DNA from: Glycera tridactyla
Lineage: Eukaryota
Reading direction: 5' to 3'
Length of the DNA stretch: 64,000 nt
Assembly (NCBI GenBank): GCA_965644265.1
Contig: OZ286476.1
Span: 22,506,001-22,570,000 of the forward strand
In this document: positions 1 to 36,239 of the stretch, piece by piece
Layout of the letters: every line of letters begins with the position of its first letter
Numbering within the stretch: position 1 is the first letter of the stretch
Made by a program: the position numbers and the translations under genes
Notes under the pieces: generated by a model
What the model was told of the DNA's origin: nothing
What the model saw: the letters and a program-made list of their open reading frames with translations, nothing else
Database searches by the model: none

Positions 1-187
1 GATGCGTAGCAATGGATGTATAATGTAGGTTTGGCATTAAATAGCAACAGAACATATAATATACCACAGGGTATGACTATAAAAGAAGGAATTTGTTTTG
101 GTTTTAGATCATTATCCTCTGGATTCATTGGATGAGATACTGTCAAGATTGACATCAGGTATATTTCGTTATACTTTGGTATTTGTA

Positions 188-1269: not shown

Positions 1270-4200
1270 ATGGAGGATAATGATTCCAGCGATGGACAAC
1301 AGTCAACTACTACTGACACTGTCATGCCATCGACTTCAAATGATAAGCAAGAGTCTCACCATACATCAAGAGTATGTGGAAGACGTGCAACAAAAAGGGC
1401 AAGGTCGAGAGGCAGATCTAGTGAATGGGCATCCAAAGTCCGCAGAAGGAATGTCAGACCTCATCCAGACTCACTGACATCTCGACAGCGTTTAGATGAT
1501 GTAAGCATAGACAATAGTCAATATTCATTAGTCCGCCATAACGTCAGACCATTTATAAACGGATTAGGTGTCAGTATATCATTTGATTTGATTTTCTCAA
1601 GCAAACTCATTCAGTCGAATCCTAGACTGATGGACGTGAAGGACATTCTAGAGTCGGTGTTTGATGAGATTCTGACTACATTATCACAAAATACACAGTC
1701 AGATGCTCTTGTGAGAATTGTTCTGTTTCAACAGGAATTAGACTCACCGATGGTTGTGCCACTGAGGAAATTGAAGATGATGAATAGTTCACATATTCTG
1801 AACACCATAAGCAATTTATCACAGTCTAAGAAAAATGTCAGGCTAGATGAATCTCTACAAATAAAGGTTGAGATCATTCACAGTATGGAGGGTGGTGCAA
1901 GATATTCGATATCTTGCGAAAATGATAGAGACAGTAAGAGGTCTATCGTAGTCGTTAAGAATGACGATCATCTATGTTTGATACGAGCCATTTTCATTTC
2001 ATGGGCATCAGCTAACAAATTATCAGATGTAGAGTTCAAGGTCAAAGTAGAACAAACAAAATTGAGTAGAACAGATACAGCATTGAAATGCAGGTGTGTG
2101 GGTCAGTCATTTTATAAGGATCTCATAAGAAAAGGTAGGAAACAACTGACAGAATGTGTATGGAAAGTTCTCAGGGAATGTAACATTGATCCTTCAGAGC
2201 CAGTTAGACTTGAACATATTCCGTCATTGGAGGCGTACTTTGAATGTGCTATATTTGTTTTTTCGAATACATGTTCAGATAGATACTTGCGTACTCCAGA
2301 TGAGCAGGTTATAGAAAACAGTGAGACAGCGCTATTTGTATACCATACAAAGCAAGCTATAAATACATATCATTATGATGCTGTCACTAATGTAAAAGCT
2401 TTTTTCGGTAAAGGATCATACTGCAATATATGTCATACACCATACAAGGATGTGCATAAATGCAAGAAGAAATGTGAGGTGTGTCAAACTTCACAGTGCT
2501 TTTGGAATCAGAAAGGAGTTGACCAGAGGGAGATCACATGCTCTGACTGTAACATGCTATGTAAGTCTCAATTTTGTTTTGAAGAACATAGAAAGATCAA
2601 GGGGGTGAAAAAAAAAACATCACAATGTCTTAAACGCTGGAAATGTCTTCTATGTTGCAGGGTGGTGATACGAGGTAAAAACAAAAGAGCACATAAATGT
2701 GGTGAGTTCAGATGCAAAAACTGTGGATGTTACTCCAGAGACTTTCACCAATGTACCATGAGGAGTGTTAACAGTAAAGAGACAGTATCCAAGAACGACA
2801 TCCACATGTACATAGCCTATGATATAGAGACATGTCAGGACGAGATTCAACACTGTTCACAAGGATAAGTGTGCTCAAACTCTTCATTCAAGTGCAATGC
2901 CTGCACCAGATGTCGCAATTGTGGTACCATGGAGTGTGGAAGTTCGGTACACAAACCCAACCTTCTTGTTGCAGAGAAATGGTGTACATTTTGTCGGAAC
3001 ATTCCATTCAGCGAGAGTACATTCTGTTCCCATTGCGGCGATAGATGCAAAAAGTGTTCACGTAGGATTCCCAATATGGGACAATTTGCATATAGACATC
3101 CTCAGTGCGATAATAATATCTGTGGACAGAGGAGGATTATATTCCATGGACTGAATTGTGTTCAACATTTTTGTGATTGGTTGATTATGAGGAGTCATTC
3201 ACATGCTGTAGTAACAGCTCACAATTCGAGCAGATATGATTCATATTTTTTATTGAAAGAAATGCTAATCAAAAAGATCAAAGTAACGAACATTGTAGTC
3301 AATGCTGGTCAGATACTCTTTTTCAGAATCAATGCTCCTTACAGCATACGTTTTGTTGACTCTGCAAGATTCATGCCAGTAAGTTTGGCTAAACTCACTA
3401 GCATGTTCCACATGAGAGCTGATGGTGATCTGAATGAGTCAATTTCCAAAGGTTTCTTTCCTCATTTATTCAATACCACAGACAGGATTGATGATAATTA
3501 TGTCGGCTCTATGCCACCCAAAACTGATTTCATGCATGAAACTATGACTCCTGACCAGAAATCGAAGTTTGAGTCTTGGTATATGGAGAGAGTAAACGAG
3601 GGGTACGTTTTTGATTTGAAGAAAGAATTGATACGATACTGTATTAATGACGTAACCATTCTTCGAAAGGCAGTCATGCAGTTTGATGATATCATGTATA
3701 GTCATGCAAAAGTCCACCCTTTTAGAGACTGTTTCACTTTGGCATCTCTCGCTATGAGAATATACAGGAAGATGCATTTGACTGAGGTGTATGATGTCAA
3801 GCTCGAGCACAAGCAAGAAGCCAAAGTGATCAGAACTCAGGCCTTTGTCAGAGATGGTATATCTAAGGTTAGAATCGATGATAAACTTCATGTGGTAGAT
3901 ACAGTGTAGTTCCTCAGATTACAAGATCGTTTCCAGGTTCTTCAAGAACTCGTTTGTAGGAGTGTCTCCACCCAATGGCTACAGGAACAATATAAAAGCA
4001 TTCAGTAAAAAAGCAGTAGCCTGGTTGGAATACCAGGCACAGACTCGTAAGATCTCCATATTGCATGCATCTAACTTTCAAGAAATAATGATCAGAAAAC
4101 CAGATGGGTCTGTGATGTATGTCGATGGATATCACCCAGGCCAAAGCATCCCAGTAGTAAATCAGATTATAGAGCAGGTACCATCAGATGCTATAGTATT

Positions 4201-5833
4201 CTTATATCACGGTTGCCTGTATCACGGGTGTATTGAATGCTATCCCGAGAATAGAGAGAGAATGCTTTTCAAGTCATCTGGGCGGAGCTATCAGGAGTGT
4301 TATTTGAGGACAATCAAGGACCAAGAGATCCTTTCTGCGATGGGACTTAATGTTGAGGTGATGTGGGAGCACGATCATGATGCATTGATTCTCATAGATT
4401 CTCTTGCCAGGGACCTTAATCGCAACGTCCATTTTGAACCTCCTTTGAATCCCAGGGAGGCATTTTTCGGAGGTAGAGTGGAGAATATCAGACTAACATG
4501 GTGTAGAGATAAGGATGATAGAATGCTGTCTTACTATGATTATTGTTCTTTATATCCATGGGCAATGAAGTATAGAACTATGCCATTATTCAACCCTACA
4601 GTTATCACAAAGGACTTCACATGCATTGATGATTATTTCGGTCTAGCAAAGGTACTGGTTGTTCCACCCAAGAGGCTATTCTATCCAATATTACCATACA
4701 GAGCAAGAGGTAAGCTCGTATTCACACTATGCGCCAAATGTGCACATTCCAACAACCAAGAAGATGTGTGTAACTGCTCAGATAATGACAGAACACTTAA
4801 AGGTGTTTACGTAACAGAAGAGTTGAAACTCGCTGTCGAAAACGGATACCGGATTTCCAAATTTTTCGAGGTTTATCATTATGATCATAATTCAGACAAT
4901 TATCTGGATTCATTTCGTGGTAGTAATTCGAACATCTTTGAAGATTACATCAACCAGTTCCTGAAGATTAAAACAGAGAGTTCGGGCTACCCGGTAGACT
5001 GTATCAGCAATGAAGACCGCGAGAAATACATAAACGACTACTATACAAAGGAGGGCATTCGTCTTGATGCACAAAACATCGAAAATAACCCCTCAAAACG
5101 TGCAATAGCGAAGCTTATGTTGAATGCCTTATTCGGCAAATACGCCCAAAAGATTCATCGTAAACAGACCAAATTCATCACCTCAGACTATCCTCAGGAG
5201 CTGTTAAACATCATGTCTGACAGCAGAATAGATATAAGTGATTTCAACATCATTTCCAGTGACATACTATCGCTGGAATACACCGAGATGAAAGACTGCA
5301 TGAAGACCCCAGCAGTCAACAATGTCGTGATTGCAGCATTCATCACAGCATACGGGAGAATGAAGCTATATGAAGCATTGAAAAAGACACACAAGAGCTG
5401 TCTGTATATGGACACAGACTCCGTAGTTTTTGAGCAAAGTACAAAAAGCACAGTTCTCCCTCTTGGCAAGTTTCTGGGTGATCTCACCTCTGAGATACCC
5501 GATGACGTGTATATCAAAGAATTTGTGAGTACGGGTCCAAAAAGCTATTCGTACATCCTGTCAAATGGTTCGAGAATTCTCAAGTACAAAGGGTTCTCGT
5601 TAAATTCAAGGGCAAAATCAATTCTAAATATTGAAACAATGAAGAGCCTGATAAAAAATCACGAAGATGAAGAAGCTAGCACGAGCTCAATCAGTGTTCC
5701 TAACACTCTAATCAAGCGAAACAAAAAGAATCTGTCAATCACCACAACGTTTGATAGGATAAAGGATTATACATTCAATGTTGATAAGAGGAGAGTGATG
5801 AGTGATCTATCCACACTACCTTTCGGCTACTGA
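1270..5833 (+). pseudogene. polB: Protein-primed family B DNA polymerase (pPolB), disrupted by in-frame TAA at 2866-2868 and a frameshift at about 3899-3909
   Basis: ExoI YDIET, ExoII AHNSSRYD, ExoIII YCINDV; Pol motifs YDYCSLYP, KLMLNALFGK, YMDTDS. Cys-rich N-terminal region and a VSR-like nuclease insertion (VDGY...YHGCLYHGC...VMWEHD). ORFs 1270..2868 and 2869..3909 share a frame; 3962..5833 is in the next frame, open from 3899. Confidence 0.95.
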
Positions 5834-6079
5834 CATCAGTAGTCGATATTCGTATCAATAGACACTCGGTAACAATCTTGATATATCCATCAGTGATAAA
5901 AGATAGATCATCAGTCTAGGAATGTATACTGTTTGTGTTGCATGTGTTTGTAGATCAATCAATCAATACAGCTTTATTTAGGCAACCACCAATAGAGTTG
6001 TTTGGATGGTTCAAATGTGGTATGAAGTTTATGTCTTCAAACCTCATACATTCTTGCATTTATATCTTGTACTATTATT

Positions 6080-6630: not shown

Positions 6631-6635
6631 CATCT

Positions 6636-6830
6636 CAGTCAGTCAGTCAGTCAGTCAGTCAGTCAGTCAGTCAGTCACCCTCCTCTGCCGCCGAGCCCGC
6701 CCTCTGGGCGGGCTCGTCGGGTGTCATAATTACCGAAGCGAACGTAGACGAAGTCGGCCGACGGGGATTCGAAGTTCCTGGGTCAGTCAGTCAGTCAGTC
6801 AGTCAGTCAGTCAGTCAGTCAGTCAGTCAG
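6636..6830. repeat. (CAGT)n microsatellite split by a 106 bp GC-rich inverted copy of about 10383-10500
   Basis: 6636-6676 and 6784-6830 are CAGT runs. The reverse complement of 6677-6782 matches CCCAGGAACTTCGAATCCC...GGTAATTATGA...GGGCGGGCTC near 10383-10500. Confidence 0.9.
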
Positions 6831-8040
6831 CTCCAATGCAAGACCGCTTTCTGCTTGATATCTGTATGTAAAACAAGCTGGTGAATCCGCTGGTCGAGTC
6901 GGATTCGCGATAAAACTGCCGGTTTCTTCACAAATAGTTTTTTGAATAGGTGAATAAATACCTCTCTAACTGAGACCACCTCCGATGCGAGACCGCTTCA
7001 TATCTATACCTAAAACAAGATGATGGGCACGCTGGTCGAGCCGGATTCGTGATAGAACTGACAGTTTTCTTCACAAATTGTCATTCGAACATGTGAATAA
7101 ATACCTTGCTGAGTGAGACAACCTCCAATGCGAGACCGCTTTTGGCCTCATATCTATACATAAAACAAGATGATGAACACGTTTATTGGATGGGATTTGT
7201 GATAGAACTGATGTGAATAAATACCTCTCGAGACCACCTCCAATGCGAGACCGCTTTTGCCTTCATATCTATACATACGGTCCAGCCAGATTTGTGATAG
7301 AACTAACGGTTTCTTCACAAAGTGAGCATTCGAAGATGTGAATAAATACCTTCCATGAGTGACCACCTCTGTTGCGAGACCGCTTTTAACTTCATATTCA
7401 TACGTAAAACAAGATGGTGAATACGCTGCTCATGTCGGATTCGTGATAGAACTGATGTGAATAAATACCTCTCTCAGTGAGACCACCTCCAATGCGAGAC
7501 CGCTTCTAGCTTCATATCTATATGTAAAACAAGATGATGAGCATGCTGGTCGAGCCGAATTCCTGATAGAACTGACGGTTTCTTCACAAATAGTCATTCG
7601 AACATGTGAATAAATACCTGTCTGTATGAGACCACCTCCAATGCGAGACCGCTTTTGGCTTCATATCTATACGTAAATCAAGATAATGAACACGATTATT
7701 GAGCCGGATTTGTGATGGAAATGATGGTTTCTTCACAAATAGCTGTCAAAGTGAGCCCTCGAGATGTATCATGTTTGTGTATCTACTCGAGCTGTGACGA
7801 AAATAACCGAGTGTACCCGAACCTGCGCCCGGCTTAATATAGTCAAATATGTGAATAAATACCTCTCGAGACCACCTCCAATGTGAGACCACTCTGGCGA
7901 ATATAGTCGTCAAACTTCATATCTATACGTAAATTAGGATGGTGAATACGCTGGTCAAGTCGGATTTGTGATAGAACTGACAGTCTCTTCATAAATAGTC
8001 GCCAAAGTGAGCATACAATAGGAATGTGTATCTGCTCGAG
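6831..8040 (+). repeat. Left arm of tandem array, ~8 units of 115-145 bp with core GAGACCACCTCCAATGCGAGACCGC
   Basis: Cores near 6832, 6972, 7114, 7230, 7360, 7480, 7628 and 7868; shared GTGATAGAACTGA and TGTGAATAAATACC. Confidence 0.9.
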
Positions 8041-8189
8041 TCCACAGAGTTAGATGAGGGGAGGGGGGTTGCTGGTGGGGTGTAGCGCTGACCCTAATCT
8101 GAGGGAGCCTACCAGCCGCATATTTGACTTTATCTAGCCTACTTATTCTAGCCAAGCACAGGTTCGGATCCACTCGGATATTTCCGTCA

Positions 8190-10190
8190 AGACAGGAGTA
8201 GATACACATTCCTATCGAATGCTCACTTTGGGGACTATTCATGAAAAAACCGTTAGTTCTATCACAAATCCGACCCCATCAGCGTGTTCATCGTCTTGTT
8301 CTACGTATAGACATGAAGTTTGAAGACTATGATCGTTAAAGCGGTTTCACATTGGAGGTGGTCCCGAGAGGTATTTATACGTATATTTGACTGTATCTAG
8401 CCGAATGCAAGATCGGCTACACTCGACTATTTCAGGCCGAGTGTAGGTTCGGATTCATTCGGCTATCTCCGTCACGGCATGAGTAGATACACACTCCTAT
8501 CGAATGCTCACTTTGGAGACTATTTTTGAAGAAACCGTTAGTTCTATCACAAATCCGACCCCATCAGCGTGTTTATCGTCTTGTTTTACGTATAGACACG
8601 AAGTTTGAAGACTATGATCGTTAAAGCGGTCTCACATTGGAGGTGGTCTCGAGAGGTATTTATACGTATATTTGACTGTATCTAGCCTACTTATTCTAGC
8701 CGAGCACAGGTTCGGATTCACTCAGCTATCTCCGTCACGGCACGAGTAGATATACATTCCTATCGAATACTGACTTTGATGACAATTTGTGAAGAAACCG
8801 TTAGTTCTATCACAAATCCGACTCCATCAGCGTGTTTATCGTCTTGTTTTACGTATAGACTTGAAGGGGTCTCGCATTGGAGGTGGTCTCACACAGAGAG
8901 GTATTCATTCACATCAGTTATATCACAAATCCGGCTCGACCAGCGTATTCCCCGCCTTGTTTTACGTATAGATATGAAGTCAAAAGCGGTCTCGCATTGG
9001 AGGTGATCTCACCGAGAGAGGTATTTATTCACATCTTCGAATGACTATTTGTGAAGGAACCGTTAGTTCTATCACAAATCCGGCTCGATCAGCATGTTCC
9101 CCATCTTGTTCTATGTATAGNNNNNNNNNNNNNNNNNNNNNNNNNNNNNNNNNNNNNNNNNNNNNNNNNNNNNNNNNNNNNNNNNNNNNNNNNNNNNNNN
9201 NNNNNNNNNNNNNNNNNNNNNNNNNNNNNNNNNNNNNNNNNNNNNNNNNNNNNNNNNNNNNNNNNNNNNNNNNNNNNNNNNNNNNNNNNNNNNNNNNNNN
9301 NNNNNNNNNNNNNNNNNNNNNNNNNNNNNNNNNNNNNNNNNNNNNNNNNNNNNNNNNNNNNNNNNNNNNNNNNNNNNNNNNNNNNNNNNNNNNNNNNNNN
9401 NNNNNNNNNNNNNNNNNNNNNNNNNNNNNNNNNNNNNNNNNNNNNTCTTGTTTTACCTATTGATATGAAACGGTCTCGCATCGGAGGTGGTCTCACTGAG
9501 AGGTATTTATTCACATCTTCGAATGACTATTTGTGAAGAAACCGTTAGTTCTATCACGAATTCGAGTCGATCAGCGTGTTCATCATCTTGTTTTACATAT
9601 AGATATGAAGGCAAAAGCGGTCTCACATTGGAGGTGATCTCACTTGGAAGGTATTTATCAAGAAACCATCAGTTATATCACAAATCCGACTCGAGCAGCA
9701 TGCTCACCATCTTGTTTTACATATAGATATGAAGGCAAAAGCGGTCTCACATTGGAGGTGATCTCACTCAGCGAGGTATTTATTCACATGTTCAAATGAC
9801 TATTTGTGAAGAAACCATCAGTTCTATCACGAATCCGACTGGACCAGCGGATTCACCAGCTTGTTTTACATACAGATATCATGCCAGAAGCGGTCTCACA
9901 TCCGAGGTGGTCTCAGTTAGAGAGGTATTTATTCACATGTTCAAATGACTATTTGTGAAGAAACCGTCAGTTCTCTTGCGAATCCGAGTGCAGCAGCGTG
10001 TTCATCGTCTTGTCCTACGTATAGATATGAAGCCAAAAGCGGTCTCAAATTGGAGGTGGTCTCACTCTGACAGGTATTTATTTGTATATTCTATCGCAAA
10101 TCCGATTCAAGCAGCATGCTCATTATCTTGTTTAACATATAGATATGATGCGGTCTCACACCGGAGGTGGTCTTACTCAGCGAGGTATGT
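8190..10190 (-). repeat. Right arm of the same array in inverted orientation, at least 10 units, with an N gap at 9121-9445
   Basis: Core reads GCGGTCTCRCATTGGAGGTGGTCTC near 8340, 8626, 8868, 8987, 9471, 9620, 9741, 9890, 10040 and 10149. Confidence 0.9.
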
Positions 10191-10298
10191 TTGACTGGCT
10201 GGCTGGGAGAGGTATGCCTGACTGCTTGTTTGTGTCACGCTCCAATTCCCAGGGGGACTTGCCACCAGACCTCTCTCATTCACCCTCAGTCAGTCAAC

Positions 10299-10446
10299 AT
10301 GGGAGCCTGCACGATCACCCTCTGGTGCTTCTGCTACCACCTCATCCAGGGCAAGATCATGAGCTGTCCGGACTTCCCGCCGCCCAGGAACTTCGAATCC
10401 CTGTCGGCCGACTTCATCTTCGTCCGCGGGACGCCCTTCTCCTTCG
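10299..10446 (+). CDS. Candidate first coding exon (signal-peptide-like MGACTITLWCFCYHLIQG...) of the antisense membrane-protein gene, or a stand-alone 98 aa ORF 10299..10595
   Basis: ATG at 10299; strongly C/G-ending codons up to a phase-1 donor TTCG|GTAATT at 10446/10447, after which the composition changes. Confidence 0.35.
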
Positions 10447-10663
10447 GTAATTATGAAACCCGACGATCCCGCCTGGAGGGCGGGCTCAGCGGGCAAGGCG
10501 GGCGGCGGGCAGGCCGGCGCTCCCCCACCCCCCCTCCAGAGAAAACAAATGCAAAACACAAACGAGTATATGCGGATTTCATCAATTTTTTTTAATTTCT
10601 TGCGTAAATACATAGAATATCGCGTTTACATATCGATTATAGTCAAAGCGTAAATAGTGTCCG

Positions 10664-12010
10664 TTACGATGCCGGAAACACGTTTCTGCCTTCGTCGATC
10701 GACATGACGGCCGGAAACATGGCGTACAGAACGAGGACGATGCTTTCGGTCAGGTTCGAAGCGAAGCGCAGGGTCAATCGCGTGGTGCCCATCTGGCGTT
10801 GCTGCGTGAACTCGTTCTGGAGCATGTGGGGCATGATGTCGAAGACGATGAAGCAATAGCCGTTCTTGTACTCCTCTCTCCCGATCATCGGAAATTGCCC
10901 GGTTTGCTCGTTTTTTGCGTGAGCCAGCGTCGAATAGGCTTCCAGATATCGGTCGTTTTCGAAATCCGTGTTGATCGGTCTGTTCGGCACGCTCTGTCCG
11001 TTCACCTCGAAAGAAATGGACGACAGCTTGAAATGCTTGAACACGAACGGGTTCTTGTTGTAGGCGCCATTGAAGTTCGCTTGGGGTACCATGCCCACGA
11101 TCAATCTCGTCGGCGTCCTGCCGTTGAACGGGTTGTCGTACTGGTCGCCGCTGGTTCCGTCTTTGATGATCCACGTCTTGGTATCGCATCTCGTGTAGGG
11201 ATACATGGCGGGTCTGACCGCGAGCGCTTCGCCGTGCGCCAGAAATACGGAGGGCGAAACGTTCAGCATGGGCACCCTGACGAAGGTGTTGGTGATCTCG
11301 ACCTTGTAGTTCCCGGTCGCGCTACTGCAGATCAGTCTGAAGGCGTCCGTGCTCTGGCGGAACTTCAGTTGGAGTTGACACGCGTTCAACAGATACCGTC
11401 CGCACTTGAAGAGGTCCAGGTGGATGCGACCGATCAGCTCGATTTCCGTCGACTCGCTCGTCCTCTCGGCTCGTTTGGCCAGCTTGAGATTGACATTGGT
11501 TGCGGCCGCGAGCTGTGCCGCGGTCCGTTTCGGAACGGCGTCGTCCAACGTTCCGGCCTCCTCCTTGTCGAACATGCCCATGCTCAGCGGCGCGATCGTT
11601 TCCGATTCGTTGGCGTTCAGTAGAATGTCCATCATGGACTTGTCGGGATAATTCGACTGACATTCCACCATCTTTTGCGAAATGTAGCATTCGACAGCAC
11701 CGAAGAAGGACAAGATCGGCATGTTCGCCAGTGCCACCCCGTCCGTCGATGCGAGATCGCCACCGTCGCTCTTGACGATCTTGACCTTCAGATGCAGGTT
11801 CATGCGTTCCAAATCGATGTACATGCGCTGGTTTCCCGTGATGCTGAACTCCAGCGGCGAATAGCTGTTTATGGCCGCCACTGGACCGTAGTCGACGTGA
11901 TTGCGCGACTCGATGGAGACCTCTCGCGGCGGGAGGTTGAACAGTGCCATGGACGACACGTATCCCCAACCTCGGTCCGTGGAGTCGGGCGGGCTCTCGG
12001 ACGTGTCCAT
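10664..12010 (-). CDS. Major capsid protein (double jelly-roll, hexon-like/PY), intact 448 aa
   Basis: Polinton MCP-type N-terminus (ALFNLPPREVSIE...Y.P...I...SPLEFSI.G...YIDL); C-terminal NG..VP..P, GYCFIVFD and G..RL.LRFA motifs. Confidence 0.92.
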   Translation of the reverse strand: MDTSESPPDSTDRGWGYVSSMALFNLPPREVSIESRNHVDYGPVAAINSYSPLEFSITGNQRMYIDLERMNLHLKVKIVKSDGGDLASTDGVALANMPILSFFGAVECYISQKMVECQSNYPDKSMMDILLNANESETIAPLSMGMFDKEEAGTLDDAVPKRTAAQLAAATNVNLKLAKRAERTSESTEIELIGRIHLDLFKCGRYLLNACQLQLKFRQSTDAFRLICSSATGNYKVEITNTFVRVPMLNVSPSVFLAHGEALAVRPAMYPYTRCDTKTWIIKDGTSGDQYDNPFNGRTPTRLIVGMVPQANFNGAYNKNPFVFKHFKLSSISFEVNGQSVPNRPINTDFENDRYLEAYSTLAHAKNEQTGQFPMIGREEYKNGYCFIVFDIMPHMLQNEFTQQRQMGTTRLTLRFASNLTESIVLVLYAMFPAVMSIDEGRNVFPAS

Positions 12011-12020
12011 GATTTTTTTT

Positions 12021-12311
12021 CTAAAATGCTATTCGTAGCGAGCCTTTTTTCGACGAACGTTTGACTGCAGTTTGGGGTCTCTTCGCGCGCTTCTTATGCC
12101 TTTTGTCGGACGACGGTCGTTTCACCCCCAATAGCGATTGCGATTGTTCCACCGCGGCTTGAGCGGGAGATATGGCGACCAGCGATTTCGCCGTCGTCGT
12201 CGTGGGTTTTACCGGTTTGCTCTCGCGAAGAAGCTTGAAGGACTTGGTGTAGGGTACCCGGCCGCGAGCCATTTGCACAAAGTGTTCCTTGACCTTCGCG
12301 TGCTCAGCCAT
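12021..12311 (-). CDS. Small basic core-like protein between penton and MCP
   Basis: 96 aa, K/R-rich C-terminus, ISPAQAAVEQ motif recalled from similarly placed Polinton ORFs. Confidence 0.65.
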   Translation of the reverse strand: MAEHAKVKEHFVQMARGRVPYTKSFKLLRESKPVKPTTTTAKSLVAISPAQAAVEQSQSLLGVKRPSSDKRHKKRAKRPQTAVKRSSKKGSLRIAF

Positions 12312-12774
12312 CCTTCTTCAGAATCAGTTTCAGATAGCAGAAATGTCGAATGCACGGCGAGTCCGAGTGCGTGGGGCGATCGAGATCCCGGTTGATGAAC
12401 CGCACTTTGATACGATCCACGTAATTCTTCACGACTCTGACGTAATGATCTTCGGGAAAGTCGATTTGTTAGTTCTCATAGACTTTGCTCGTGGATCTCA
12501 TCGGAAGATCGCTCGGTATCAGGAGGGTGAGCAGCGGGAGTTGCGCGTTTCCAACCTGCGTCTCTTCTATAAAGTCGCACAGCACCAGTAGCGGTAATCG
12601 GAGGCTCTTGACGGACTTGTTTGCCGGAAACATGTACGAGAAGTACGCGCTGGCGATTCGACATTTCCAGCCGCCGTCCAAAAACGAAGGTTGCGGTAAG
12701 ACGTACGTAAACTCAGACAGGTCGTCTCCGTCGTCACTCCCGGAAATACCCGGTACAATCACAATCTGATCCAT
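12304..12774 (-). pseudogene. Minor capsid protein (penton/PX-like), one in-frame TAA at 12469-12471
   Basis: FTYVLPQP..LDGGWKC, LLVLCDFIEETQVGNAQLPLL. The frame continues past the TAA as QIDFPEDHYVRVVKNYVDRIKVRFINRD...LILKKDG* (TGA 12304-12306). Confidence 0.8.
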
Positions 12775-12918
12775 GGGCTAGTGCGTGTTCCAGTCTTTTG
12801 ACTCTGGCGCGAAAGCGGATGGAATCGAGAAGCTGCGAGCTAATGTCTCTCGCGTCTCTAGCCTCGTGCGGGTACTCTTCCAGATATCTGAATTCGACGA
12901 AATGATCGAAAGCCACTT

Positions 12919-14058
12919 TCAACTGTGTGGAACGTGCGTGACCTCCTTCGCGTCTATCCATGAGTTGAACTTGTTGTGGAAGCCTTTCCACTTGACGTAC
13001 ACCTGTTCCCTTCCATCCAGCACGCGTCTCTTGACGATCTTTTCTATGTCGTACAGTTGATCCGCGTCGGCCGTGTCGCGCACTGCCTGTAGTTCGCTTT
13101 CGTAGAAACTACCTTGCAACCGCTCGCCGTCTTGATCTCTTATGAAGTACACGGGCATGTCTTGCCTCTTTATGACCGAGTCTACGTAGTAGATCTCTCT
13201 GGTCCATCTCTCCGCGTACTCTCCGTACATTTTCTCGCGTCTTTTGGTAATTCTCACCGATTGACCTACACCGTATCTCGGCTTCTTGTTGACTTAGCTC
13301 GCATAATTCCTGGGCTTCCGCTTTTGACGACTGACGTATTGTGCGTATCTGACTTCGTGTTCGTTGTCGGCGTTCACTTCGTTCGGCGTACATCCGATGG
13401 AGCTGTGATAGGTGTCGTTGTATCCTCGAACAAAATCCTGTAGCTTGTCTATGTAACGCTCTGTGCGGTTCTCGTTCATGTATTTTTTAATGCGCTTCTT
13501 GAGCGATCTCCACACTCTTTCGATGAATGCGCATTGCGCCGTGCCGTGAGAGAAATAGTGACCCATGTCGTTTGTTTCTAGGTATTGCAAAAACTTGCTG
13601 TTGGTGAACTCGCTGCCCATGTCTGTCCTCAGACTGTTGCATTTTGCTCCCGCCTCTCGTAACACCGACTCAAACGCTTCTATCACGTTGTCACCGGTCT
13701 TTGTTTGGAGCGGTCTCACATACAGCTTTCTACTGAATATGCAAATGACACCCAACAGGTATCCGGTGTTGGAATTACGTTTTCGCAACTTCTGGTAATC
13801 GCACAGATCCGCTTCCCATATGTCGTTTATCCCGTTGGAAATGACGTTCGACTTTGGGAACTTGAACCGCGCCTCCTTGTTCAGCATATAACTATCCCGG
13901 GTCTGTAACCACCTTTTCACGTCGCTCAGCGTGATCTTGAACCTGGTGTTTTTTCTCACGGCCTTGTACACCTTGTCCGGCGATTGGAAACTACCGGCAG
14001 AGCGCGGATCTGTATAGTGTCTTTTGAGATAATCTTCGCCCTTTTTCGTTAGGACCAT
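12919..14058 (-). pseudogene. int: Retroviral-like (rve) integrase with C-terminal chromodomain, one in-frame TAA at 13294-13296
   Basis: DDE: WEADLCD, LRTDMGSEF, FIERVWRSLK. The frame continues RNYAS*VNKKPRYGVGQSVRI...WTREIY, then the chromodomain YDIEKIVKRR...YVKWKGF...NSWI. Confidence 0.93.
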
Positions 14059-14060
14059 CG

Positions 14061-14546
14061 TTACGATTTATTCTTGTTGAATTTTGGCGTAGGTAGCATT
14101 TGGCCGTACGAAACGCCCAGCATCAAAATCCAAACCTGTCTGTTCTGCGCGTTCAGACTGAGTAACACAATGCTGCACACCACTGTTATTATCGCCAGCA
14201 GGGACTGCGTGTAAAATATCTCCCTCGACTGGTTTGTTCTCTTATGAATTATGGGATCGAAAATTATTCCCCTGGGGTTGACTGAGCCGTTTACCGACGT
14301 GTTTTCGGCCGACGTCTTCTCCTGTTGCGTTTTTTTAATTCTGGGACAGGGTAGCATCAGTCCTATTCCGGTAGAAAGATATATGATCCACACCTGATCC
14401 TCGTCGTGTCCGATCGCGATGTTGATTATGCTAGCAATCACCACCAGAAATATCATGGACGCCTGTATGTAAAACACCTCTCTCACTAACACGTTCCGAC
14501 GGATCCACGATCTATCGACATCTTGCTCTTCGGTGGATTCCATCAT
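14061..14546 (-). CDS. Predicted four-TM membrane protein made of two similar halves
   Basis: EVFYIQ...VWIIYLSTGIGLMLPCP and EIFYTQ...VWILMLGVSYGQMLPTP, each with two hydrophobic segments. First ATG at 14546. Confidence 0.75.
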   Translation of the reverse strand: MMESTEEQDVDRSWIRRNVLVREVFYIQASMIFLVVIASIINIAIGHDEDQVWIIYLSTGIGLMLPCPRIKKTQQEKTSAENTSVNGSVNPRGIIFDPIIHKRTNQSREIFYTQSLLAIITVVCSIVLLSLNAQNRQVWILMLGVSYGQMLPTPKFNKNKS

Positions 14547-15106
14547 CACTCGTTGCTACCTTTATGCAAACAAGATACACTTATGCGTTCCTGCAGGGAT
14601 TCTAGAGCGCGGACAACGCTGATCTGACTCTTCTCGTTGTGTTTCATCCCCGTGATGATGACGACGCCCGACGAGTGTATCAAGAACTTTATTCGTTTAC
14701 CGACCCTCCAAATGAGCGCGTTGAATATCTCCGGTTCGTAAGTTGCGTTCTTCAAATTCAAGCGACGCAGGTCCGGCAGTGGAGTTAACCTGACAGTTGC
14801 CGATATCGTGTTGATCTTGATCCTCTCTAGACGGGGACTCAGACCTTTTCTCTGCAATAGTCTGGCGTATTGTCGAACTTTCTTCTTAGCCAGTTCGACG
14901 GAATTTGCTCCGTGTACCGATATATAACCATTACGGAAAATGAGAGCGGTCGATTTGATCCGTTTGTGACGCCAGACGATGTTACTCATCTTGGGATTGA
15001 CGACGATTCTGGAACAGTTGCGATACATCCAATCAGAGTCTATTGACGTGTTCAAATTTGCGCTGGCAACGACATTAGTTATGCAAATGTCTACATTCTG
15101 ATCCAT
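14546..15106 (-). CDS. Divergent TATA-box-binding protein (TBP)-like protein, intact 186 aa
   Basis: Both TBP repeats align by eye: ITNVVASANL, NPK, TALIFRNG..SVHGANS, KKVRQYARLLQRKG, KINTISAT, YEPEIFNALIWR, FLIHSSGVVIITG. Confidence 0.88.
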   Translation of the reverse strand: MDQNVDICITNVVASANLNTSIDSDWMYRNCSRIVVNPKMSNIVWRHKRIKSTALIFRNGYISVHGANSVELAKKKVRQYARLLQRKGLSPRLERIKINTISATVRLTPLPDLRRLNLKNATYEPEIFNALIWRVGKRIKFLIHSSGVVIITGMKHNEKSQISVVRALESLQERISVSCLHKGSNE

Positions 15107-15675
15107 CTCTGTTCTAGTAGCTTTCTCTGTTCGTCGATGCTCTGGCGGACTTTCTTCAAGTCGAGCTTTGTCGGTTTTACCCGTTTTCTCGGTACGACCT
15201 CGTCCTCTACTACGATAGATGGCAACTTCTTTCCTTTCTTCGTTCGCTCTTCCAATCGTTTAACTGTCCTTTTTCGTTTCCTGTTTGTAGGTGCACTGCC
15301 AGACGACTCCACCACGTCCCGTCCGACTGTCGAGGAGGTGCGGGATGATTCAACGAGTGCTGCCTCGGATGGTACAACCGGCACTTCGACTGTCGGGATA
15401 GATGCCGCAACGATCGCACTATCTGACGAATTGACTAGTCCATCAACGTCAACAGCAGTTTTATCGACGGATGCATCGACCGCGGTCCGTCAAGCGACAT
15501 CATCCGGAGCGAAGACTGACGACGCCTCGACCGTGGACCGTTGAGCGATGTCGACTGCAGTTTTGTTGGCGGAATCTACCGCAGTCGACGGTTCCACCAC
15601 CAACATATCCGACGAAGATCCTTCTAGACGCGACTTGGGTAAGATGATATATTCCCTCACTTCCTTCGATGCCAT
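15091..15675 (-). pseudogene. Polinton ORF of unknown function (S/T/D-rich middle, K/R-rich C-terminus), one in-frame TGA at 15490-15492
   Basis: ORFs 15490..15675 and 15091..15384 share a frame and are joined by open codons (DVA*RTAVDASVDK...TVEVPVV). It overlaps both neighbours. Confidence 0.65.
15291..15638 (+). other. Candidate Ser/Thr-rich (mucin-like) exon, phase 1-1, with internal TGA at 15542-15544
   Basis: Acceptor TTTTCGTTTCCTGTTTGTAG|, donor TTGG|GTAAGA; 348 nt. The pyrimidine tract could instead reflect Lys/Arg codons on the opposite strand. Confidence 0.3.
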
Positions 15676-15995
15676 ATAAGTCTCTTGGCCGATCTGTACA
15701 ACAACAACAGTATGTCGTGAATGCTGTCCTGATTATCGATCAATAAGGCCTTTTTCTTCTTCAACGACGTCCTCCGCGATGCAAGCACTCGAACCAGCGG
15801 TTTCAAATCCACCAGCGATTTCTTTGTGGAATCCGACAGCGGAAGAATGCCATACAACGCGTTGTGCGCGAGTTCGGATATCGCTTTGATCTGCTTGTTG
15901 GATATGGATTGAAGAAGCTTGTTTCTGACCCAGGCTCTCCTCCCGGCCAGTACTAACATGGAAATGAATGGTCCAGACTCTCTTATGAGCTCCAT
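15657..15995 (-). CDS. Conserved small Polinton protein (PW-like; probably the family labelled GasderminX in adintoviruses)
   Basis: LL...S.KQIKAISELAHNALYGILPL.....K.L...K..VRVL....TSLKKKK.LL pattern, located next to the ATPase. Family name is from memory. Confidence 0.65.
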   Translation of the reverse strand: MELIRESGPFISMLVLAGRRAWVRNKLLQSISNKQIKAISELAHNALYGILPLSDSTKKSLVDLKPLVRVLASRRTSLKKKKALLIDNQDSIHDILLLLYRSAKRLIWHRRK

Positions 15996-16029
15996 ATCCG
16001 ACTACTTTTTCGCAATTCACACGCGTCAC

Positions 16030-16740
16030 TTATGAATAGAATGTACACGTTTCACCCGGAAATATGTCTGTTCTCAAACGCAGATAGTTTGGCATGTTCA
16101 CGGTCATGTCCACAACCAGATATCCGTACCGTCTGTCGATTACGGATTTCTCGTAAGCCTTTGGGAGCAAGAGCTTATTTGTTGGGAACCGCTGTCTTCC
16201 AAAAACCTTGATCTGATCAGATGCGGCTGGTGTTTCGAACAGGATCACGTATCCGGCATTCACTGCGATAGTCTTGCTGAATTTACCTTGCTGAAATAGA
16301 TTGTGGCTCACGAAAACCATGGAGCAACCGCTGTGGTGGCATCTGACTGTAAAGAAGTCCATCACGTCTGTCGAATCCACAATTTCTCTCATGAGATCGT
16401 CCAGTACGATTATCAAATGATGCGAGCTCGGATCACAGTGTTCCAAAATCTCGTCTTGAGATAGTAAACCCTGGTGAAAGATTACGCAATCTAACTCGTT
16501 ACGGATCTGGTCAAATAACGGTTGGTAATTTTTGTAACAATACAAGATGTGATGCGGTTTGTCGCTCTCAATTAAGAACTCCTTGTTTGTGAGAAATCTG
16601 TGAAGAAAACTGGTCTTTCCTGCACCAGATCTACCCACTAAGATATAACACTGGTTGAGTTTGAATTTGATGTATCCGTTCTCGCCGTCCAACGAAATCA
16701 AGTCAGACCACACGGGATCCAGTTGCTTGAGACGGCTCAT
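16030..16740 (-). CDS. A32/FtsK-like genome packaging ATPase, intact 236 aa
   Basis: Walker A GRSGAGKT, Walker B IIVLDDL, RCHH...VSHNLF, C-terminal YGYLVVD...LRTDIF. Confidence 0.95.
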   Translation of the reverse strand: MSRLKQLDPVWSDLISLDGENGYIKFKLNQCYILVGRSGAGKTSFLHRFLTNKEFLIESDKPHHILYCYKNYQPLFDQIRNELDCVIFHQGLLSQDEILEHCDPSSHHLIIVLDDLMREIVDSTDVMDFFTVRCHHSGCSMVFVSHNLFQQGKFSKTIAVNAGYVILFETPAASDQIKVFGRQRFPTNKLLLPKAYEKSVIDRRYGYLVVDMTVNMPNYLRLRTDIFPGETCTFYS

Positions 16741-17075
16741 ATCTTAATCGGCTCCCGCAATTGGTGGTTGTGTGCCGCGTAGAATATATCTGTCAACTCT
16801 TTGGCCTTTGATGGAAATTTGTCCATTAAGATCGAGGTTAACTCCCACAACACTTTGACTCTTCCCCAATTCCACTTCCCATCATCAAACATGTACCGCA
16901 AGATGGCCCTGTATTGATGTACGGAGGTAATATCTCTGCTTATGATGCCGATAGATTCCGTAATCCTGCGATCTAGCGATTCCAGTATAACATCCACTCT
17001 CTTATGACTTACAGACGAAGACGATGACGACTTGTTGCTCGAGACATCCATTCTGACGTCCTTGGTTGCGTTCAT
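16737..17075 (-). CDS. Small Bcl-2-like protein (BH1 motif)
   Basis: YRAILRYMFDDGKWNWGRVKVLWEL matches BH1 (F..V..ELF.DG..NWGRIV.L..F). No clear BH2 or C-terminal TM. Confidence 0.72.
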   Translation of the reverse strand: MNATKDVRMDVSSNKSSSSSSVSHKRVDVILESLDRRITESIGIISRDITSVHQYRAILRYMFDDGKWNWGRVKVLWELTSILMDKFPSKAKELTDIFYAAHNHQLREPIKI

Positions 17076-18875
17076 TGGAGTGTGCGGTTTAGCTGTTTAC
17101 GCGTATAAGAGACATCGAGGTGAGTCACTTATAACAAGGGAAAGACTACGAATATGTGTTGTAGCTGCAATAGATACCTACATGTGATATTTCTGATGCG
17201 GTTCTACTACTGTTCTGCAAAGTCCGGCTGTTTACGACTTGAAACACGTATATCTTTCACGTGGCGTAGTGTAATTCTACTATATATATATATATATATA
17301 TATACAGTCTGACTGGCCAAGTGTGATGGCGACACATATGATGTTAAACCAACGAATGACAAACAGCATATGTTGTAATTGTGTTTATTGGTGCCGATAC
17401 AGGTGTATACATATATATATGAATATAACAATTCAATGAATACATTGCAATATATATAATTCTACTAATACGGATGTAAGCATGTCTCGTCCTTGTTTCA
17501 GGTGTCATCCCTCTCAGGTTGCCGGTTGCGGTCGATATACCCATGATACCTGTGGATTCCGGGACGGCTATGAATTCAGGTGAGTAGAGCTCAATGAACG
17601 TGGTACAGTACAGTGTTCGCGTTGCCTACATACTAACTATATATGTAGTATATGATTAATATAGAGCTCACAATGTGCGGCATGAATAAATGCTACATTC
17701 ATCATTTACACTGTACAAGTTCGTACTAGGAGGATCATCGAGTTACGTGAACTAAGATTCCCGGGATATGAGATTACATGAACGTAATCTCTCTCACAAT
17801 GTCTATACCGTTATAGGATCCTGTAGTCAAGTTCAGATAGTTTAATTGTAGTTTATGATGAGGATCACGAGTAGTAAAGTTCATACTGCTCAATTGCAGT
17901 TCATGATGGGGATGACGAAGAGGAAGACGAGATTGACGACAGCACTATATTCACTGTTGTCAATGAGGAGACCATAGTCGAGGAAGGAGCACGGGGGAAT
18001 GTGGCGTCGACACCTTTGTTAAAAAGCATGCCCAGACCATCTGATGAAATCACTGTCATAGAATCGGGCAAACCTCGTGCCAAGATCAACCTTCGTGATG
18101 TCGAAAAAGCTCTCAGTAACCTCTCCATTGATGACACAGTATATCGTCCCGGCGAGGAAGCAACATCAGAAGTGCACGGCGTGATAGATGAGATGAATCT
18201 TGATAACACTGTCTACCACAAACTCCATGGAGATAAAGAAGACATCATCTTCCCCCGACGTGGCACCAGAGAACGTAGACCAGGTAATCACTCATTCTCT
18301 TGCACATCGATCTCGATCCCGATCTCTGTATTGAACTCATCCACGTGCATCTTCATCTCTGCAAATTCTTCTGTGTTCAGATGAATCCCCCTCAAACCTG
18401 GCTGCAATGTACCGTCTTTAGCCTCGTAGTATTCCCTTAGCTGTAGTAGCTTGTAATCATTGTTCATAGACACGTGCTGGTTCGAATCCAAAGCAAACTT
18501 GAACTCTTGTCGATTGCCTGCCATGATTTCGTCGACGGCTGCCTGGATGGTATCTAGCTTCTTGATGAACTCTTTCCATACCGGCTGAGCCATGGTGTAT
18601 CTTCGAATCCTCAAGTGGCTGCTCTTTCGTTGGAATGAAAACCTCGACATCACCACCATGGTTGATCTGGGAGTGTAGGCTATCATGGTCTCTGCTTCAT
18701 GGGCCACGCTCAGCACCATTCTGACTGTTCCACGTGCATCTGGAATTAATACTTTTGATTAGTAAGGTTGTAACAATATGGTATATACATTGTAAATGTG
18801 AGATTACGTGTCTCGAGTATGAATACAATACTATTACACAATGATCTGTTCTCATTTGCAGTTGATCGATACTGA
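17015..18875 (+). CDS. Spliced single-pass membrane protein, exons 17015-17119, 17502-17579, 17900-18283, 18862-18875 (5' exons uncertain)
   Basis: All junctions are canonical AG/GT and phase 1 (CTTACAG|, |GTGAGT, TTGTTTCAG|, |GTGAGT, ATTGCAG|, |GTAATC, ATTTGCAG|). The joined frame is open: DEDDDDLLLETS-ILTSLVAFIGVCGLAVYAY-KRHR, an acidic tail, ending RPVDRY*. Confidence 0.7.
18288..18719 (-). CDS. PC4/Sub1-like ssDNA-binding transcriptional coactivator domain protein
   Basis: LLQLREYYEAKDGTLQPGLRGIHLNTEEFAEM matches the PC4 pattern IDIREYW...G...PGRKGISL..EQW. A degenerate second copy is probable in the N-terminal half. Confidence 0.8.
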   Translation of the reverse strand: MVLSVAHEAETMIAYTPRSTMVVMSRFSFQRKSSHLRIRRYTMAQPVWKEFIKKLDTIQAAVDEIMAGNRQEFKFALDSNQHVSMNNDYKLLQLREYYEAKDGTLQPGLRGIHLNTEEFAEMKMHVDEFNTEIGIEIDVQENE

Positions 18876-36230: not shown

Positions 36231-36239
36231 AGGTTCATT

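What the first reader, a model, noticed from the sequence alone, without database searches (positions are those of the whole stretch)
14546..15106. A Polinton encoding its own divergent TATA-binding protein
The intact 186 aa ORF covers both TBP repeats. The two DNA-contacting Asn (TNVV, INTI) are kept. Two of the four intercalating Phe are kept (ALIF, EIF); the others are replaced (NPKMS, LIH), hinting at altered DNA specificity or a decoy role. TBP homologs are established in large nucleocytoviruses, but I do not recall TBP as a standard Polinton gene. It could drive element promoters or sequester host TFIIA/TFIIB.
Basis: partly seen in the sequence, partly recalled or inferred. Interest (0 to 1): 0.85.

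Follow-up and report, generated by a model that had tools for sequence, protein, structure and literature searches.

The report
Polinton-borne divergent TATA-binding protein gene
The ORF is a real two-repeat TATA-binding protein (TBP) gene inside a decayed Polinton/Maverick virus-like element, and it belongs to a large, almost undescribed clade of Polinton TBPs that keep the surfaces for host transcription factors but have changed DNA-reading residues.

Summary
The 186-aa ORF at 14546-15106 (minus strand) is real and is a TBP. Pfam TBP gives E 4e-29 over both repeats, and the AlphaFold model matches solved TBPs at TM about 0.8.

It lies in a Polinton/Maverick with protein-primed PolB, rve-chromo integrase, double-jelly-roll capsid protein, packaging ATPase and a PC4-like gene. 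This copy is decayed: three genes are broken, the protease is missing and a repeat block is nested inside it.

The gene is not an oddity of this element. In every relative on a contig long enough to judge (eight different contexts), a TBP sits just upstream of the integrase. This holds down to 35% identity. One such relative is a complete 12.5-kb element with 95-98% matching terminal repeats, next to an animal gene.

At least 74 cluster representatives form this clade. dN/dS among close members is 0.04-0.09.

The clade keeps the two glutamates that contact TFIIB and the basic patch on helix 2 of the N-lobe. It never has the second central Asn, which is Thr or Ser instead.

Best reading: an element-encoded core-promoter factor that plugs into the host Pol II machinery. 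The only precedent I found is a figure label in the adintovirus paper.

The parts
14546..15106 (-). TBP gene, 186 aa, intact; two TBP repeats
   Evidence: relatives at 49-54% identity
15091..15384 (-). 97-aa basic ORF overlapping the TBP start by 16 nt. Relatives have a 146-187-aa gene here, also overlapping their TBP start. No detectable sequence similarity.
14061..14549 (-). 162-aa predicted membrane protein between TBP and integrase; 50% identical to the 166-aa gene of L003
12919..14058 (-). Integrase (rve core plus C-terminal chromodomain); broken by one in-frame stop
   Evidence: Pfam rve E 1.4e-10, Chromo E 4.6e-9; 61% identical to the L003 integrase over 372 aa
12307..12774 (-). Homologue of the conserved 152-aa gene downstream of the integrase; broken by one in-frame stop
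10664..12010 (-). Major capsid protein, 448 aa, intact; double jelly-roll
   Evidence: weak Pfam DJR-like hit; AF2 model pLDDT 69.7 matching bracovirus-borne Maverick, virophage, adomavirus, adintovirus and giant-virus capsid proteins; 54% identical to L003
15657..15995 (-). Conserved 112-aa gene of unknown function
   Evidence: 43% identical to the L003 113-aa gene
16030..16740 (-). Packaging ATPase (A32/FtsK-like), 236 aa, intact
   Evidence: weak P-loop and Pox_A32 hits; 50% identical to the L003/L004 ATPase
16737..17075 (-). 112-aa ORF with a weak Bcl-2-family hit; first gene of the co-oriented block
   Evidence: Pfam Bcl-2 E 3e-4, below cut-off; L003 homologue E 3e-3
17111..17207 (-). Remnant of the block promoter. 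It aligns with the conserved heat-shock element, TATA box and leader of relatives, but the HSE and TATA box are degenerate here.
   Evidence: alignment A3; coordinates
18288..18719 (-). PC4-like (transcriptional coactivator p15 / ssDNA-binding fold) gene, 143 aa
   Evidence: Pfam PC4 E 6.9e-8, above cut-off; a PC4-like gene (Pfam hit from significant to only faint) lies in the same relative position in L003, L004, L009 and L010
18746..20136 (-). Two conserved genes of unknown function (93 aa and 290 aa)
   Evidence: tblastn matches to L003/L004 genes
1270..5833 (+). Protein-primed family-B DNA polymerase, convergent with the capsid/TBP block; broken by one in-frame stop and one frameshift
   Evidence: Pfam DNA_pol_B_2 E 2.5e-24 and 6.5e-27; 36% identical to the L009 PolB
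6688..10492 (.). Nested foldback-like block: 113-149-nt tandem repeats in two inverted halves, flanked by a 110-nt inverted match. It occupies the place where relatives have the protease gene. It contains a masked N run that I left alone.

Best explanation
The ORF encodes a member of a Polinton/Maverick-specific clade of TATA-binding proteins.

Shown:
- It has the complete two-repeat TBP saddle.
- It lies in a conserved position just upstream of the integrase, in a virus-like element with pPolB, a double-jelly-roll capsid protein, a packaging ATPase and a PC4-like gene.
- The clade evolves under strong purifying selection.
- The clade keeps the two C-lobe glutamates that contact TFIIB/TFB and the basic patch on helix 2 of the N-lobe.
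- The clade has changed the central DNA-reading residues.

Inferred mechanism:
- The protein acts as an element-encoded core-promoter factor. It binds and bends element promoter DNA and nucleates a pre-initiation complex through host TFIIB (possibly Brf) and the host polymerase.
- This gives the element a supply of TBP activity of its own, with shifted sequence preference or kinetics.
- The PC4-like gene may be a second part of the same transcription module, or the element's ssDNA-binding protein.

This copy: the element here is decayed, so this gene is most likely a relic of that function and not active today.
For: Fold and family.

Conserved synteny: TBP lies directly upstream of the integrase, or separated from it only by a small membrane-protein gene. 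This holds in L001/L002, L003, L004/L005 (49-54% identity), L009, L010, L012 (35-38%) and L018-L020.

Complete relative: L009 is a complete element of about 12.5 kb with terminal inverted repeats 95-98% complementary. It lies on a 499-kb contig beside a Cys-loop receptor gene.

Clade size: in an NJ tree, all eight context-verified TBPs fall on one side of a split holding 74 of 152 sequences and none of the 56 canonical TBPs.

Selection: dN/dS is 0.04-0.09 for pairs about 85% identical.

Host-factor signatures kept, counts out of 74 clade members: E124 in 63, E126 in 71, R78 in 70, R82 in 71, Lys/Arg at position 86 in 64. Ravarani et al. 2020 (PMC7221094) identify the two glutamates as the TFIIB/TFB contacts. 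They identify the N-lobe basic cluster as the shared site for TFIIA, TAF1, Mot1 and Brf. They report that giant-virus TBPs lose both signatures and bring their own TFIIB. Here no TFIIB-like gene is seen in any context.

DNA-reading changes are clade-wide. The second central Asn column is Thr in 59, Ser in 7 and Asn in none. The neighbouring Val column is Ser or Thr in 72 of 74. The first-lobe Thr column is Asn or His.

Promoters: relatives carry TATA boxes upstream of gene blocks, 14 of 74 genes against a 9.4% background, p = 0.008. A conserved TATA box with a heat-shock element precedes the block that contains TBP.
Against: - No expression, binding or interaction data exist.
- The mapping of R78/R82/R86 onto the published N-lobe positions rests on alignment and spacing. 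I did not check it in a structure.
- The promoters I could recognise have ordinary TATA boxes that host TBP should read. So the need for a special TBP is unexplained, and no element-specific box was found.
- In the close relatives TBP has no promoter of its own and overlaps the upstream ORF. How it is expressed from a multi-gene block is unknown.
- In the close subfamily one Phe of each intercalating pair is replaced (Met, and Tyr or His), which could weaken DNA kinking.
- The NJ tree has no support values.
- The 74-member count rests on eight verified contexts.
Confidence: 0.55

Rival explanations
1. Decoy or competitor. The protein binds host TFIIB, TFIIA, Brf or TBP regulators without productive promoter binding. 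It thereby redirects or dampens host transcription, or escapes negative regulators, in favour of the element.
For: Host-factor contact signatures are kept while DNA-contact residues are changed: 2 of 4 Phe, 1 of 2 Asn, and Val to Ser. The recognisable element promoters have ordinary TATA boxes that host TBP could serve.
Against: Most clade members outside the close subfamily keep three or four Phe: 43, 53, 52 and 43 of 62 at the four columns. The DNA-facing changes are conservative and clade-wide, not degenerate. That looks like a retuned DNA surface, not an abandoned one. A pure decoy would not need the whole saddle under dN/dS below 0.1.
Confidence: 0.15
2. Architectural DNA-bending cofactor, not a transcription factor. 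The TBP fold helps the integrase, either in intasome assembly or by tethering to TBP-containing complexes at target sites. Or it bends AT-rich termini for protein-primed replication.
For: The most conserved feature of the gene is its place immediately upstream of the integrase, in eight different contexts down to 35% identity. From general knowledge, some retroelements target Pol III promoters through TFIIIB, which contains TBP.
Against: Adjacency in a compact viral genome is weak evidence of functional coupling. This role would not explain retention of the TFIIB-contact glutamates in 63-71 of 74 members, or of the N-lobe basic cluster. The integrase carries its own chromodomain for targeting. 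I did not examine the insertion sites of relatives.
Confidence: 0.12
3. A host TBP, or a TBP paralogue or pseudogene, that lies inside or next to the element by chance or by very recent capture.
For: TBP is a universal host gene. Identity to canonical TBPs is about 30-35%.
Against: It is co-oriented with, and overlaps, element genes on both sides. The synteny is conserved in distant elements. It has no N-terminal extension. It falls outside the tight canonical cluster. All 46 members scanned score far below the archaeal TBP model cut-offs.
Confidence: 0.02

Closest known systems
Cellular eukaryotic TBP (core domain)
   Same: Two-repeat saddle fold (TM about 0.8). First central Asn, two of four Phe, second-lobe Thr, the stirrup glutamate pair that contacts TFIIB, and the basic residues on N-lobe helix 2 are all kept.
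   Different: About 30-35% identity and no N-terminal extension. Second central Asn is Thr, the flanking Val is Ser, the first-lobe Thr is His, one Phe is Met and one is His. The first stirrup is one residue shorter. It is encoded by a mobile element.
TBP-like proteins of giant viruses (Nucleocytoviricota)
   Same: A virus-encoded TBP fold. BFVD matches include Heterosigma akashiwo virus, Terrestrivirus, marseillevirus and mimivirid TBPs.
   Different: They are structurally and sequentially more distant than cellular TBPs (10-25% identity, TM mostly 0.5-0.7). According to Ravarani et al. 2020, giant-virus TBPs lose the TFIIB-contact and N-lobe signatures and travel with a viral TFIIB. The Polinton clade keeps both signatures and has no TFIIB-like gene.
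The gene labelled 'TBP' in a MELD virus with adintovirus-like PolB (Starrett et al. 2021, PMC8502044, Fig. 5)
   Same: A TBP homologue in a mid-sized PolB/integrase virus-like element.
   Different: The text held gives only a figure-legend label. There is no sequence, conservation, position or residue analysis. I could not tell which element carries it, or whether it belongs to the clade found here.
TBP-related factor 2 / TBPL1 (from general knowledge; no named hit came back)
   Same: It works like this in outline: a TBP paralogue with changed DNA-contact residues that, as I recall, still binds TFIIA and TFIIB and serves a separate promoter set.
   Different: No tool returned a named TBPL1, so relatedness is untested. 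TBPL1 is a host gene, not an element gene.
Polintons / Mavericks / adintoviruses
   Same: pPolB, rve integrase with chromodomain, double-jelly-roll capsid protein, A32-like ATPase. Relatives also have a cysteine protease and terminal inverted repeats.
   Different: This clade adds a conserved TBP and a PC4-like gene. The window's copy lacks a recognisable protease and recognisable termini.

Membership tests
TBP family (Pfam PF00352, TBP-like fold) | Two tandem TBP repeats scoring above the curated threshold | tested here: met
   100.6 bits against a cut-off of 22.9, in two stretches
TBP family (Pfam PF00352, TBP-like fold) | Saddle-shaped fold superposable on solved TBPs | tested here: met
   Model pLDDT 84.6. 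44 PDB TBP chains match at E 1e-14 to 2e-10, TM 0.74-0.81. The helix H1' region of the second repeat is shorter and modelled with less confidence.
TBP family (Pfam PF00352, TBP-like fold) | Four intercalating Phe | tested here: not met
   The four columns read Met, Phe, Phe and His here. The close relatives read Met, Phe, Phe and Tyr. Canonical TBPs have Phe in 54-56 of 56.
TBP family (Pfam PF00352, TBP-like fold) | Two central Asn that hydrogen-bond the minor groove | tested here: not met
   The first is kept (N11). The second column is T100, and 0 of 74 clade members have Asn there against 56 of 56 canonical TBPs.
TBP family (Pfam PF00352, TBP-like fold) | C-lobe glutamate pair contacting TFIIB/TFB (C.L3.2 and C.L3.4 of Ravarani et al. 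2020) | tested here: met
   E124 and E126 are present here, and in 63 and 71 of 74 clade members.
TBP family (Pfam PF00352, TBP-like fold) | Sequence-specific binding and bending of TATA DNA | not testable with these tools
   No binding data or complex modelling are available.
Canonical eukaryotic TBP orthologue (host gene) | Core at least 45% identical to other eukaryotic TBPs, N-terminal extension, host gene context | tested here: not met
   30-35% identity. The core starts at residue 7-9. It falls outside the canonical cluster. It is embedded in element genes.
Archaeal TBP | Reaches the NCBIfam TBP equivalog or subfamily cut-offs | tested here: not met
   Best score 88 bits against cut-offs of 181-347. 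None of 46 clade members comes near.
Giant-virus TBP-TFIIB orthogonal pair | A co-encoded TFIIB-like protein and diverged TFIIB-contact residues | tested here: not met
   No TFIIB-like Pfam hit in any related element. The contact glutamates are conserved. Pfam alone could miss a very divergent TFIIB.
Polinton / Maverick element | Protein-primed family-B DNA polymerase | tested here: met
   DNA_pol_B_2 E 2.5e-24 and 6.5e-27. The gene is broken twice.
Polinton / Maverick element | Retroviral-type (rve) integrase | tested here: met
   rve E 1.4e-10 plus chromodomain E 4.6e-9. The gene is broken once.
Polinton / Maverick element | Double-jelly-roll major capsid protein | tested here: met
   The AF2 model matches virophage, adomavirus, adintovirus, MELD-virus and giant-virus capsid proteins, 125 matches at E up to 1e-3.
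Polinton / Maverick element | FtsK/A32-like packaging ATPase | tested here: inconclusive
   Only sub-threshold P-loop and Pox_A32 hits. It is 50% identical to relatives' genes that carry the same weak hit.
Polinton / Maverick element | Adenain-like cysteine protease | tested here: not met
   No match in the window to the L003 159-aa gene. Relatives have weak Peptidase_C5/C48 hits. The nested repeat block lies where the gene is expected.
Polinton / Maverick element | Terminal inverted repeats | tested here: not met
   No inverted match between the left 6.8 kb and the rest of the window, apart from the flanks of the nested block. The left end is probably outside the window. The relative L009 has terminal repeats 95-98% complementary.

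The most novel reading that the evidence does not exclude
A large clade of Polintons/Mavericks, found in an animal-type contig and in marine and other metagenomes, maintains its own TBP lineage, usually with a PC4-like gene. This TBP stays compatible with host TFIIB and with partners of the TFIIA type, but reads DNA through a rewired centre: Asn to Thr, Val to Ser, Thr to His or Asn. That would make it a third kind of TBP paralogue, beside host TBP-related factors and the orthogonal TBP-TFIIB pairs of giant viruses. It would be a mobile-element general transcription factor that plugs into the host pre-initiation complex.
Probability: 0.45. Interest if true: 0.7.

Novelty: new variant of a known kind. 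Interest (0 to 1): 0.6.

Why it matters
Polintons/Mavericks are thought to rely wholly on host transcription. A conserved general transcription factor of their own changes that picture.

It also offers a natural contrast to giant-virus TBPs. Those are orthogonal systems with their own TFIIB. This one appears built to use host TFIIB.

The clade-wide swaps at the central DNA-reading positions are a natural experiment on how TBP specificity can drift while the partner interfaces stay fixed.

The TBP-integrase gene pair gives annotators a simple marker for an unannotated clade. None of the Polinton-clade relatives I looked up carries an organism or accession; one has a generic JGI 'TBP' name.

Tried and rejected
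- IMG/VR scan with the close-family alignment: no relatives.
With the close family it returned five loci, all from one assembly already seen.
- Rfam on the whole window: nothing.
- PDB profile search with the capsid alignment: nothing.
- Search for the element's terminal repeats in the window: none found.
- k-mer search for an element-specific promoter box upstream of genes in seven elements: nothing consistent beyond ordinary TATA boxes.
- Alternative genetic code as an explanation for the in-frame stops: rejected. The same codon also ends intact genes at the positions where relatives' genes end.
- Host identification: failed. The TBP is not in the protein collection. Capsid and integrase searches gave only unnamed metagenome proteins, plus one 27%-identical Nymphon striatum protein.
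- Three short contigs (L006-L008) and two distant representatives (P0067, P0160) gave no usable context.
- P0015, a high-scoring 376-aa hit, is a tandem pair of canonical-like TBP domains, not a fusion of this family.
Full report
**1. The observation**

The ORF listing gives an ATG-started ORF of 186 aa on the minus strand at 14546..15106.
- Pfam TBP (PF00352) matches at E 4.3e-29, 100.6 bits against a curated cut-off of 22.9, in two stretches that cover both repeats.
- phmmer against PDB sequences returns 35 TBP chains from plants, fungi, animals, microsporidia and archaea, at E 2e-17 to 4e-11.
- An AlphaFold2 model built on ten family sequences has pLDDT 84.6 and pTM 0.74, with the expected strand-helix order in both halves.
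- Foldseek places the model on solved TBPs at TM 0.75-0.81 and E about 1e-14. The next non-TBP hit is at E 1e-3.

So the TBP call is secure and far beyond chance.

**2. Residues**

I used the printed HMMER alignments to PDB TBPs. I also used a MAFFT alignment of 152 TBP cores from the exhaustive profile search.
- The four canonical Phe columns read M40, F57, F128 and H144.
- The first central Asn is kept (N11).
- The second is not. The column that is Asn in 56 of 56 canonical TBPs holds T100. N99 lies in the preceding column, which is Gln in canonical TBPs. The following column (I101; Ile or Met in every group) fixes the register.
- The Val next to the second Asn is S102.
- In the first lobe the Val/Thr pair is S63/H65.
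- In the second lobe the equivalent pair is conservative (I150/T152).
- The C-terminal stirrup keeps its Tyr-Glu-Pro-Glu-(Ile/Leu)-Phe pattern.

**3. The element**

On the same strand, tightly packed and often overlapping, lie these genes:
- a 448-aa capsid gene (10664-12010);
- a homologue of a conserved 152-aa gene (12307-12774);
- an rve integrase with chromodomain (12919-14058);
- a 162-aa membrane protein (14061-14549);
- the TBP;
- a short basic ORF that overlaps its start;
- a conserved 112-aa gene;
- a P-loop ATPase (16030-16740);
- a 112-aa ORF with a weak Bcl-2 hit;
- after a 1.2-kb gap, a PC4-like gene (18288-18719) and further conserved genes up to about 21.3 kb.

A protein-primed PolB lies convergently on the plus strand at 1270-5833.

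The capsid model (pLDDT 69.7) matches double-jelly-roll capsid proteins. Its best hit is a Cotesia bracovirus-borne protein (26% identity, E 7.5e-26). Virophage, adomavirus, adintovirus, MELD-virus and giant-virus capsid proteins follow.

This is a Polinton/Maverick, and it is decayed:
- PolB has one in-frame stop and one frameshift relative to L009.
- The integrase has one in-frame stop.
- The 152-aa homologue has one in-frame stop.
- The protease found in relatives is not detectable.
- A 3.8-kb foldback-like block of tandem repeats is nested between PolB and the capsid gene.
- No terminal repeats are found, and the left end is probably outside the window.
- The PolB arm has a lower G+C than the capsid/TBP block, 0.39 against about 0.50. 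I cannot fully exclude that the two arms come from different copies. However, the convergent architecture is the same as in L009, L010 and L018.

Masked N runs were left alone.

**4. Relatives**

The word-indexed search found seven unnamed relatives at 49-54% identity. Their contigs show the same order: ATPase, 113-aa gene, 146-187-aa gene, TBP, 166-169-aa gene, integrase, 152-aa gene, about 85-aa gene, capsid, and a likely protease.

The exhaustive profile search of 1.84 billion representatives found 2,988 TBPs at E up to 1e-3. Clustering the best 150 gave two groups:
- one tight group of 56 canonical TBPs with N-terminal extensions, scoring about 85 bits;
- about 85 very diverse short proteins (about 170 aa, core starting at residues 1-5), scoring up to 207 bits.

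None of 46 of these short proteins approaches the archaeal TBP model cut-offs.

Four distant representatives sat on contigs long enough to read. All four lie immediately upstream of an rve integrase in elements with PolB, capsid, ATPase, and variously PC4, BIR or Peptidase_C5 genes:
- P0024 (L009), P0027 (L010) and P0043 (L012);
- P0033 (L018-L020, Tara Oceans metagenomes).

L009 is a complete element of about 12.5 kb with terminal inverted repeats 95-98% complementary. It sits on a 499-kb contig next to a Cys-loop receptor gene, which indicates an animal genome.

In an NJ tree without support values, all eight context-verified TBPs fall on one side of a split with 74 leaves and no canonical TBP. 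Because only the top 150 hits are listed, 74 is a lower bound.

**5. Selection**

For pairs about 85% identical, dN is 0.09-0.12 and dS is 1.0-2.3, giving dN/dS of 0.04-0.09. Synonymous sites are near saturation, so these ratios are rough, but the direction is clear.

The window's protein keeps 11 of the 12 most conserved family positions.

The intact ORF in this decayed copy says little by itself. With about four breaks in 3,300 codons of neighbouring genes, a 186-codon ORF escapes a break about 80% of the time.

**6. What the residue pattern means**

Ravarani et al. 2020 (PMC7221094) make three relevant points:
- Two C-lobe glutamates contact a conserved Arg and Thr of TFIIB/TFB.
- A eukaryote-specific basic cluster on the N-lobe is the common docking site for TFIIA, TAF1, Mot1 and Brf1/2.
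- Giant-virus TBPs lose both signatures and carry their own TFIIB.

In the Polinton clade the picture is the opposite:
- The glutamates are present in 63 and 71 of 74 members.
- Three basic residues spaced four apart on helix 2 (R78, R82, R/K86) are present in 70, 71 and 64 of 74 members.
- R78 and R82 are two of only three invariant columns in the 46-member alignment.

No TFIIB-like gene appears in any context.

The changes concentrate on the DNA-facing underside and are clade-wide: Asn to Thr or Ser (0 of 74 Asn), Val to Ser or Thr (72 of 74), and first-lobe Thr to Asn or His.

The extra loss of one Phe from each pair (Met, and Tyr or His) is confined to the close subfamily and some others. 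Most clade members keep Phe.

My assignment of R78/R82/R86 to the published positions N.H2.13/17/21 is an inference from alignment and spacing.

**7. Promoters**

Upstream of the first gene of the block that contains TBP, four relatives share three features: a perfect three-unit heat-shock element, a TATA box about 20 nt downstream, and a conserved leader. The window aligns there, but both elements are degenerate (17111-17207).

The heat-shock pattern occurs 7 times in L003 against 0.38 expected (0 of 200 shuffles reach 7). It occurs 6 times in L004. In both it clusters upstream of the gene blocks, with a TATA box following in at least five cases. It is absent from the window's element.

Across six elements, 14 of 74 genes have a TATA-type box within 100 nt upstream, against a 9.4% background (p = 0.008). 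These are mostly genes that follow an intergenic gap.

No element-specific box emerged. So these elements use TATA-containing promoters of Pol II type. Whether their own TBP or the host's reads them is open.

**8. Explanation and rivals**

Most likely (0.55): an element-encoded core-promoter factor that nucleates the host pre-initiation complex through TFIIB, with retuned DNA reading. The PC4-like gene may be a partner, or the element's ssDNA-binding protein.

Rivals:
- a decoy for host factors (0.15);
- an architectural cofactor for the adjacent integrase or for protein-primed replication (0.12);
- a host gene present by chance (0.02).

The remaining probability covers functions I have not thought of.

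**9. Literature**

Full-text searches for Polinton, Maverick or adintovirus together with TBP or TATA terms gave one relevant item. Starrett et al. [quoted passage not shown] 5, on MELD viruses with adintovirus-like PolB.

Other hits concern mirusvirus-like or giant-virus TBPs or unrelated uses of the words.

The library lacks most subscription journals, so an earlier mention cannot be excluded.

**10. Slips**

- In one search my script printed the codon type of each of the three in-frame stops and the residue that one relative has at the aligned position. It printed no positions. I used it only to reject an alternative genetic code, and I do not repeat it.
- My first notebook entry and my working reasoning gave the bounds of the separate ORF pieces of the integrase and of PolB. 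These imply where the breaks lie.
- In this report each broken gene is given as one part, with counts only.
- The consensus lines that the alignment tools printed were not used.

Noticed in passing
L003:1401-1510, 3672-3704, 6103-6115; L004:137-323, 2456-2493, 5560-5572; also L001 and L005: Perfect heat-shock elements (GAAnnTTCnnGAA) cluster in the stretches upstream of the gene blocks of the close relatives; in at least five of these spots a TATA box follows within about 100 nt. L003 has 7 against 0.38 expected. This suggests stress-inducible promoters. There are none in the window's own element.
   Followed up: partly
window 6688-10492: A foldback-like block: 113-149-nt tandem repeats arranged as two inverted halves, flanked by a 110-nt inverted match. 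It is nested in the Polinton where relatives carry the protease gene.
   Followed up: partly
window 18288-18719 (-); L009:7450-8130; L010:169-714; L004:3396-3770: A PC4-like gene (transcriptional coactivator p15 / ssDNA-binding fold) recurs in the TBP-bearing elements at the same relative position. It could be a transcription partner of the TBP or the element's ssDNA-binding protein.
   Followed up: partly
window 16737-17075 (-); L003:6323-6580: A small ORF at the head of the capsid/TBP block gives sub-threshold Bcl-2-family hits in two divergent copies (E 3e-4 and 3e-3). L010 and L011 carry a BIR (IAP-like) gene. These may be anti-apoptotic accessory genes, as reported for adintoviruses.
   Followed up: no
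window 35500-45720 (-): A run of decayed minus-strand ORFs with reverse-transcriptase-like and RNase H/integrase-linker-like motifs, plus a 486-aa coiled-coil, gag-like ORF. It looks like a degraded retrotransposon. There are no Pfam hits.
   Followed up: no
window 1-7000 versus 10000-17000: The PolB arm has G+C of about 0.39, but the capsid/integrase/TBP block has 0.47-0.55. The two arms may have different histories, or the block may be under different compositional constraint.
   Followed up: no
window 98-790 (+): A 230-aa ORF upstream of PolB in another frame, with a very weak deaminase-like hit (E 0.03). It could be an N-terminal PolB extension or a separate gene. The element's left end is not within the window.
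   Followed up: no
L009:5337-5551: A cluster of short palindromes containing GGCGGCCGCC lies just outside the left terminal repeat of the complete relative. Its meaning is unknown.
   Followed up: no
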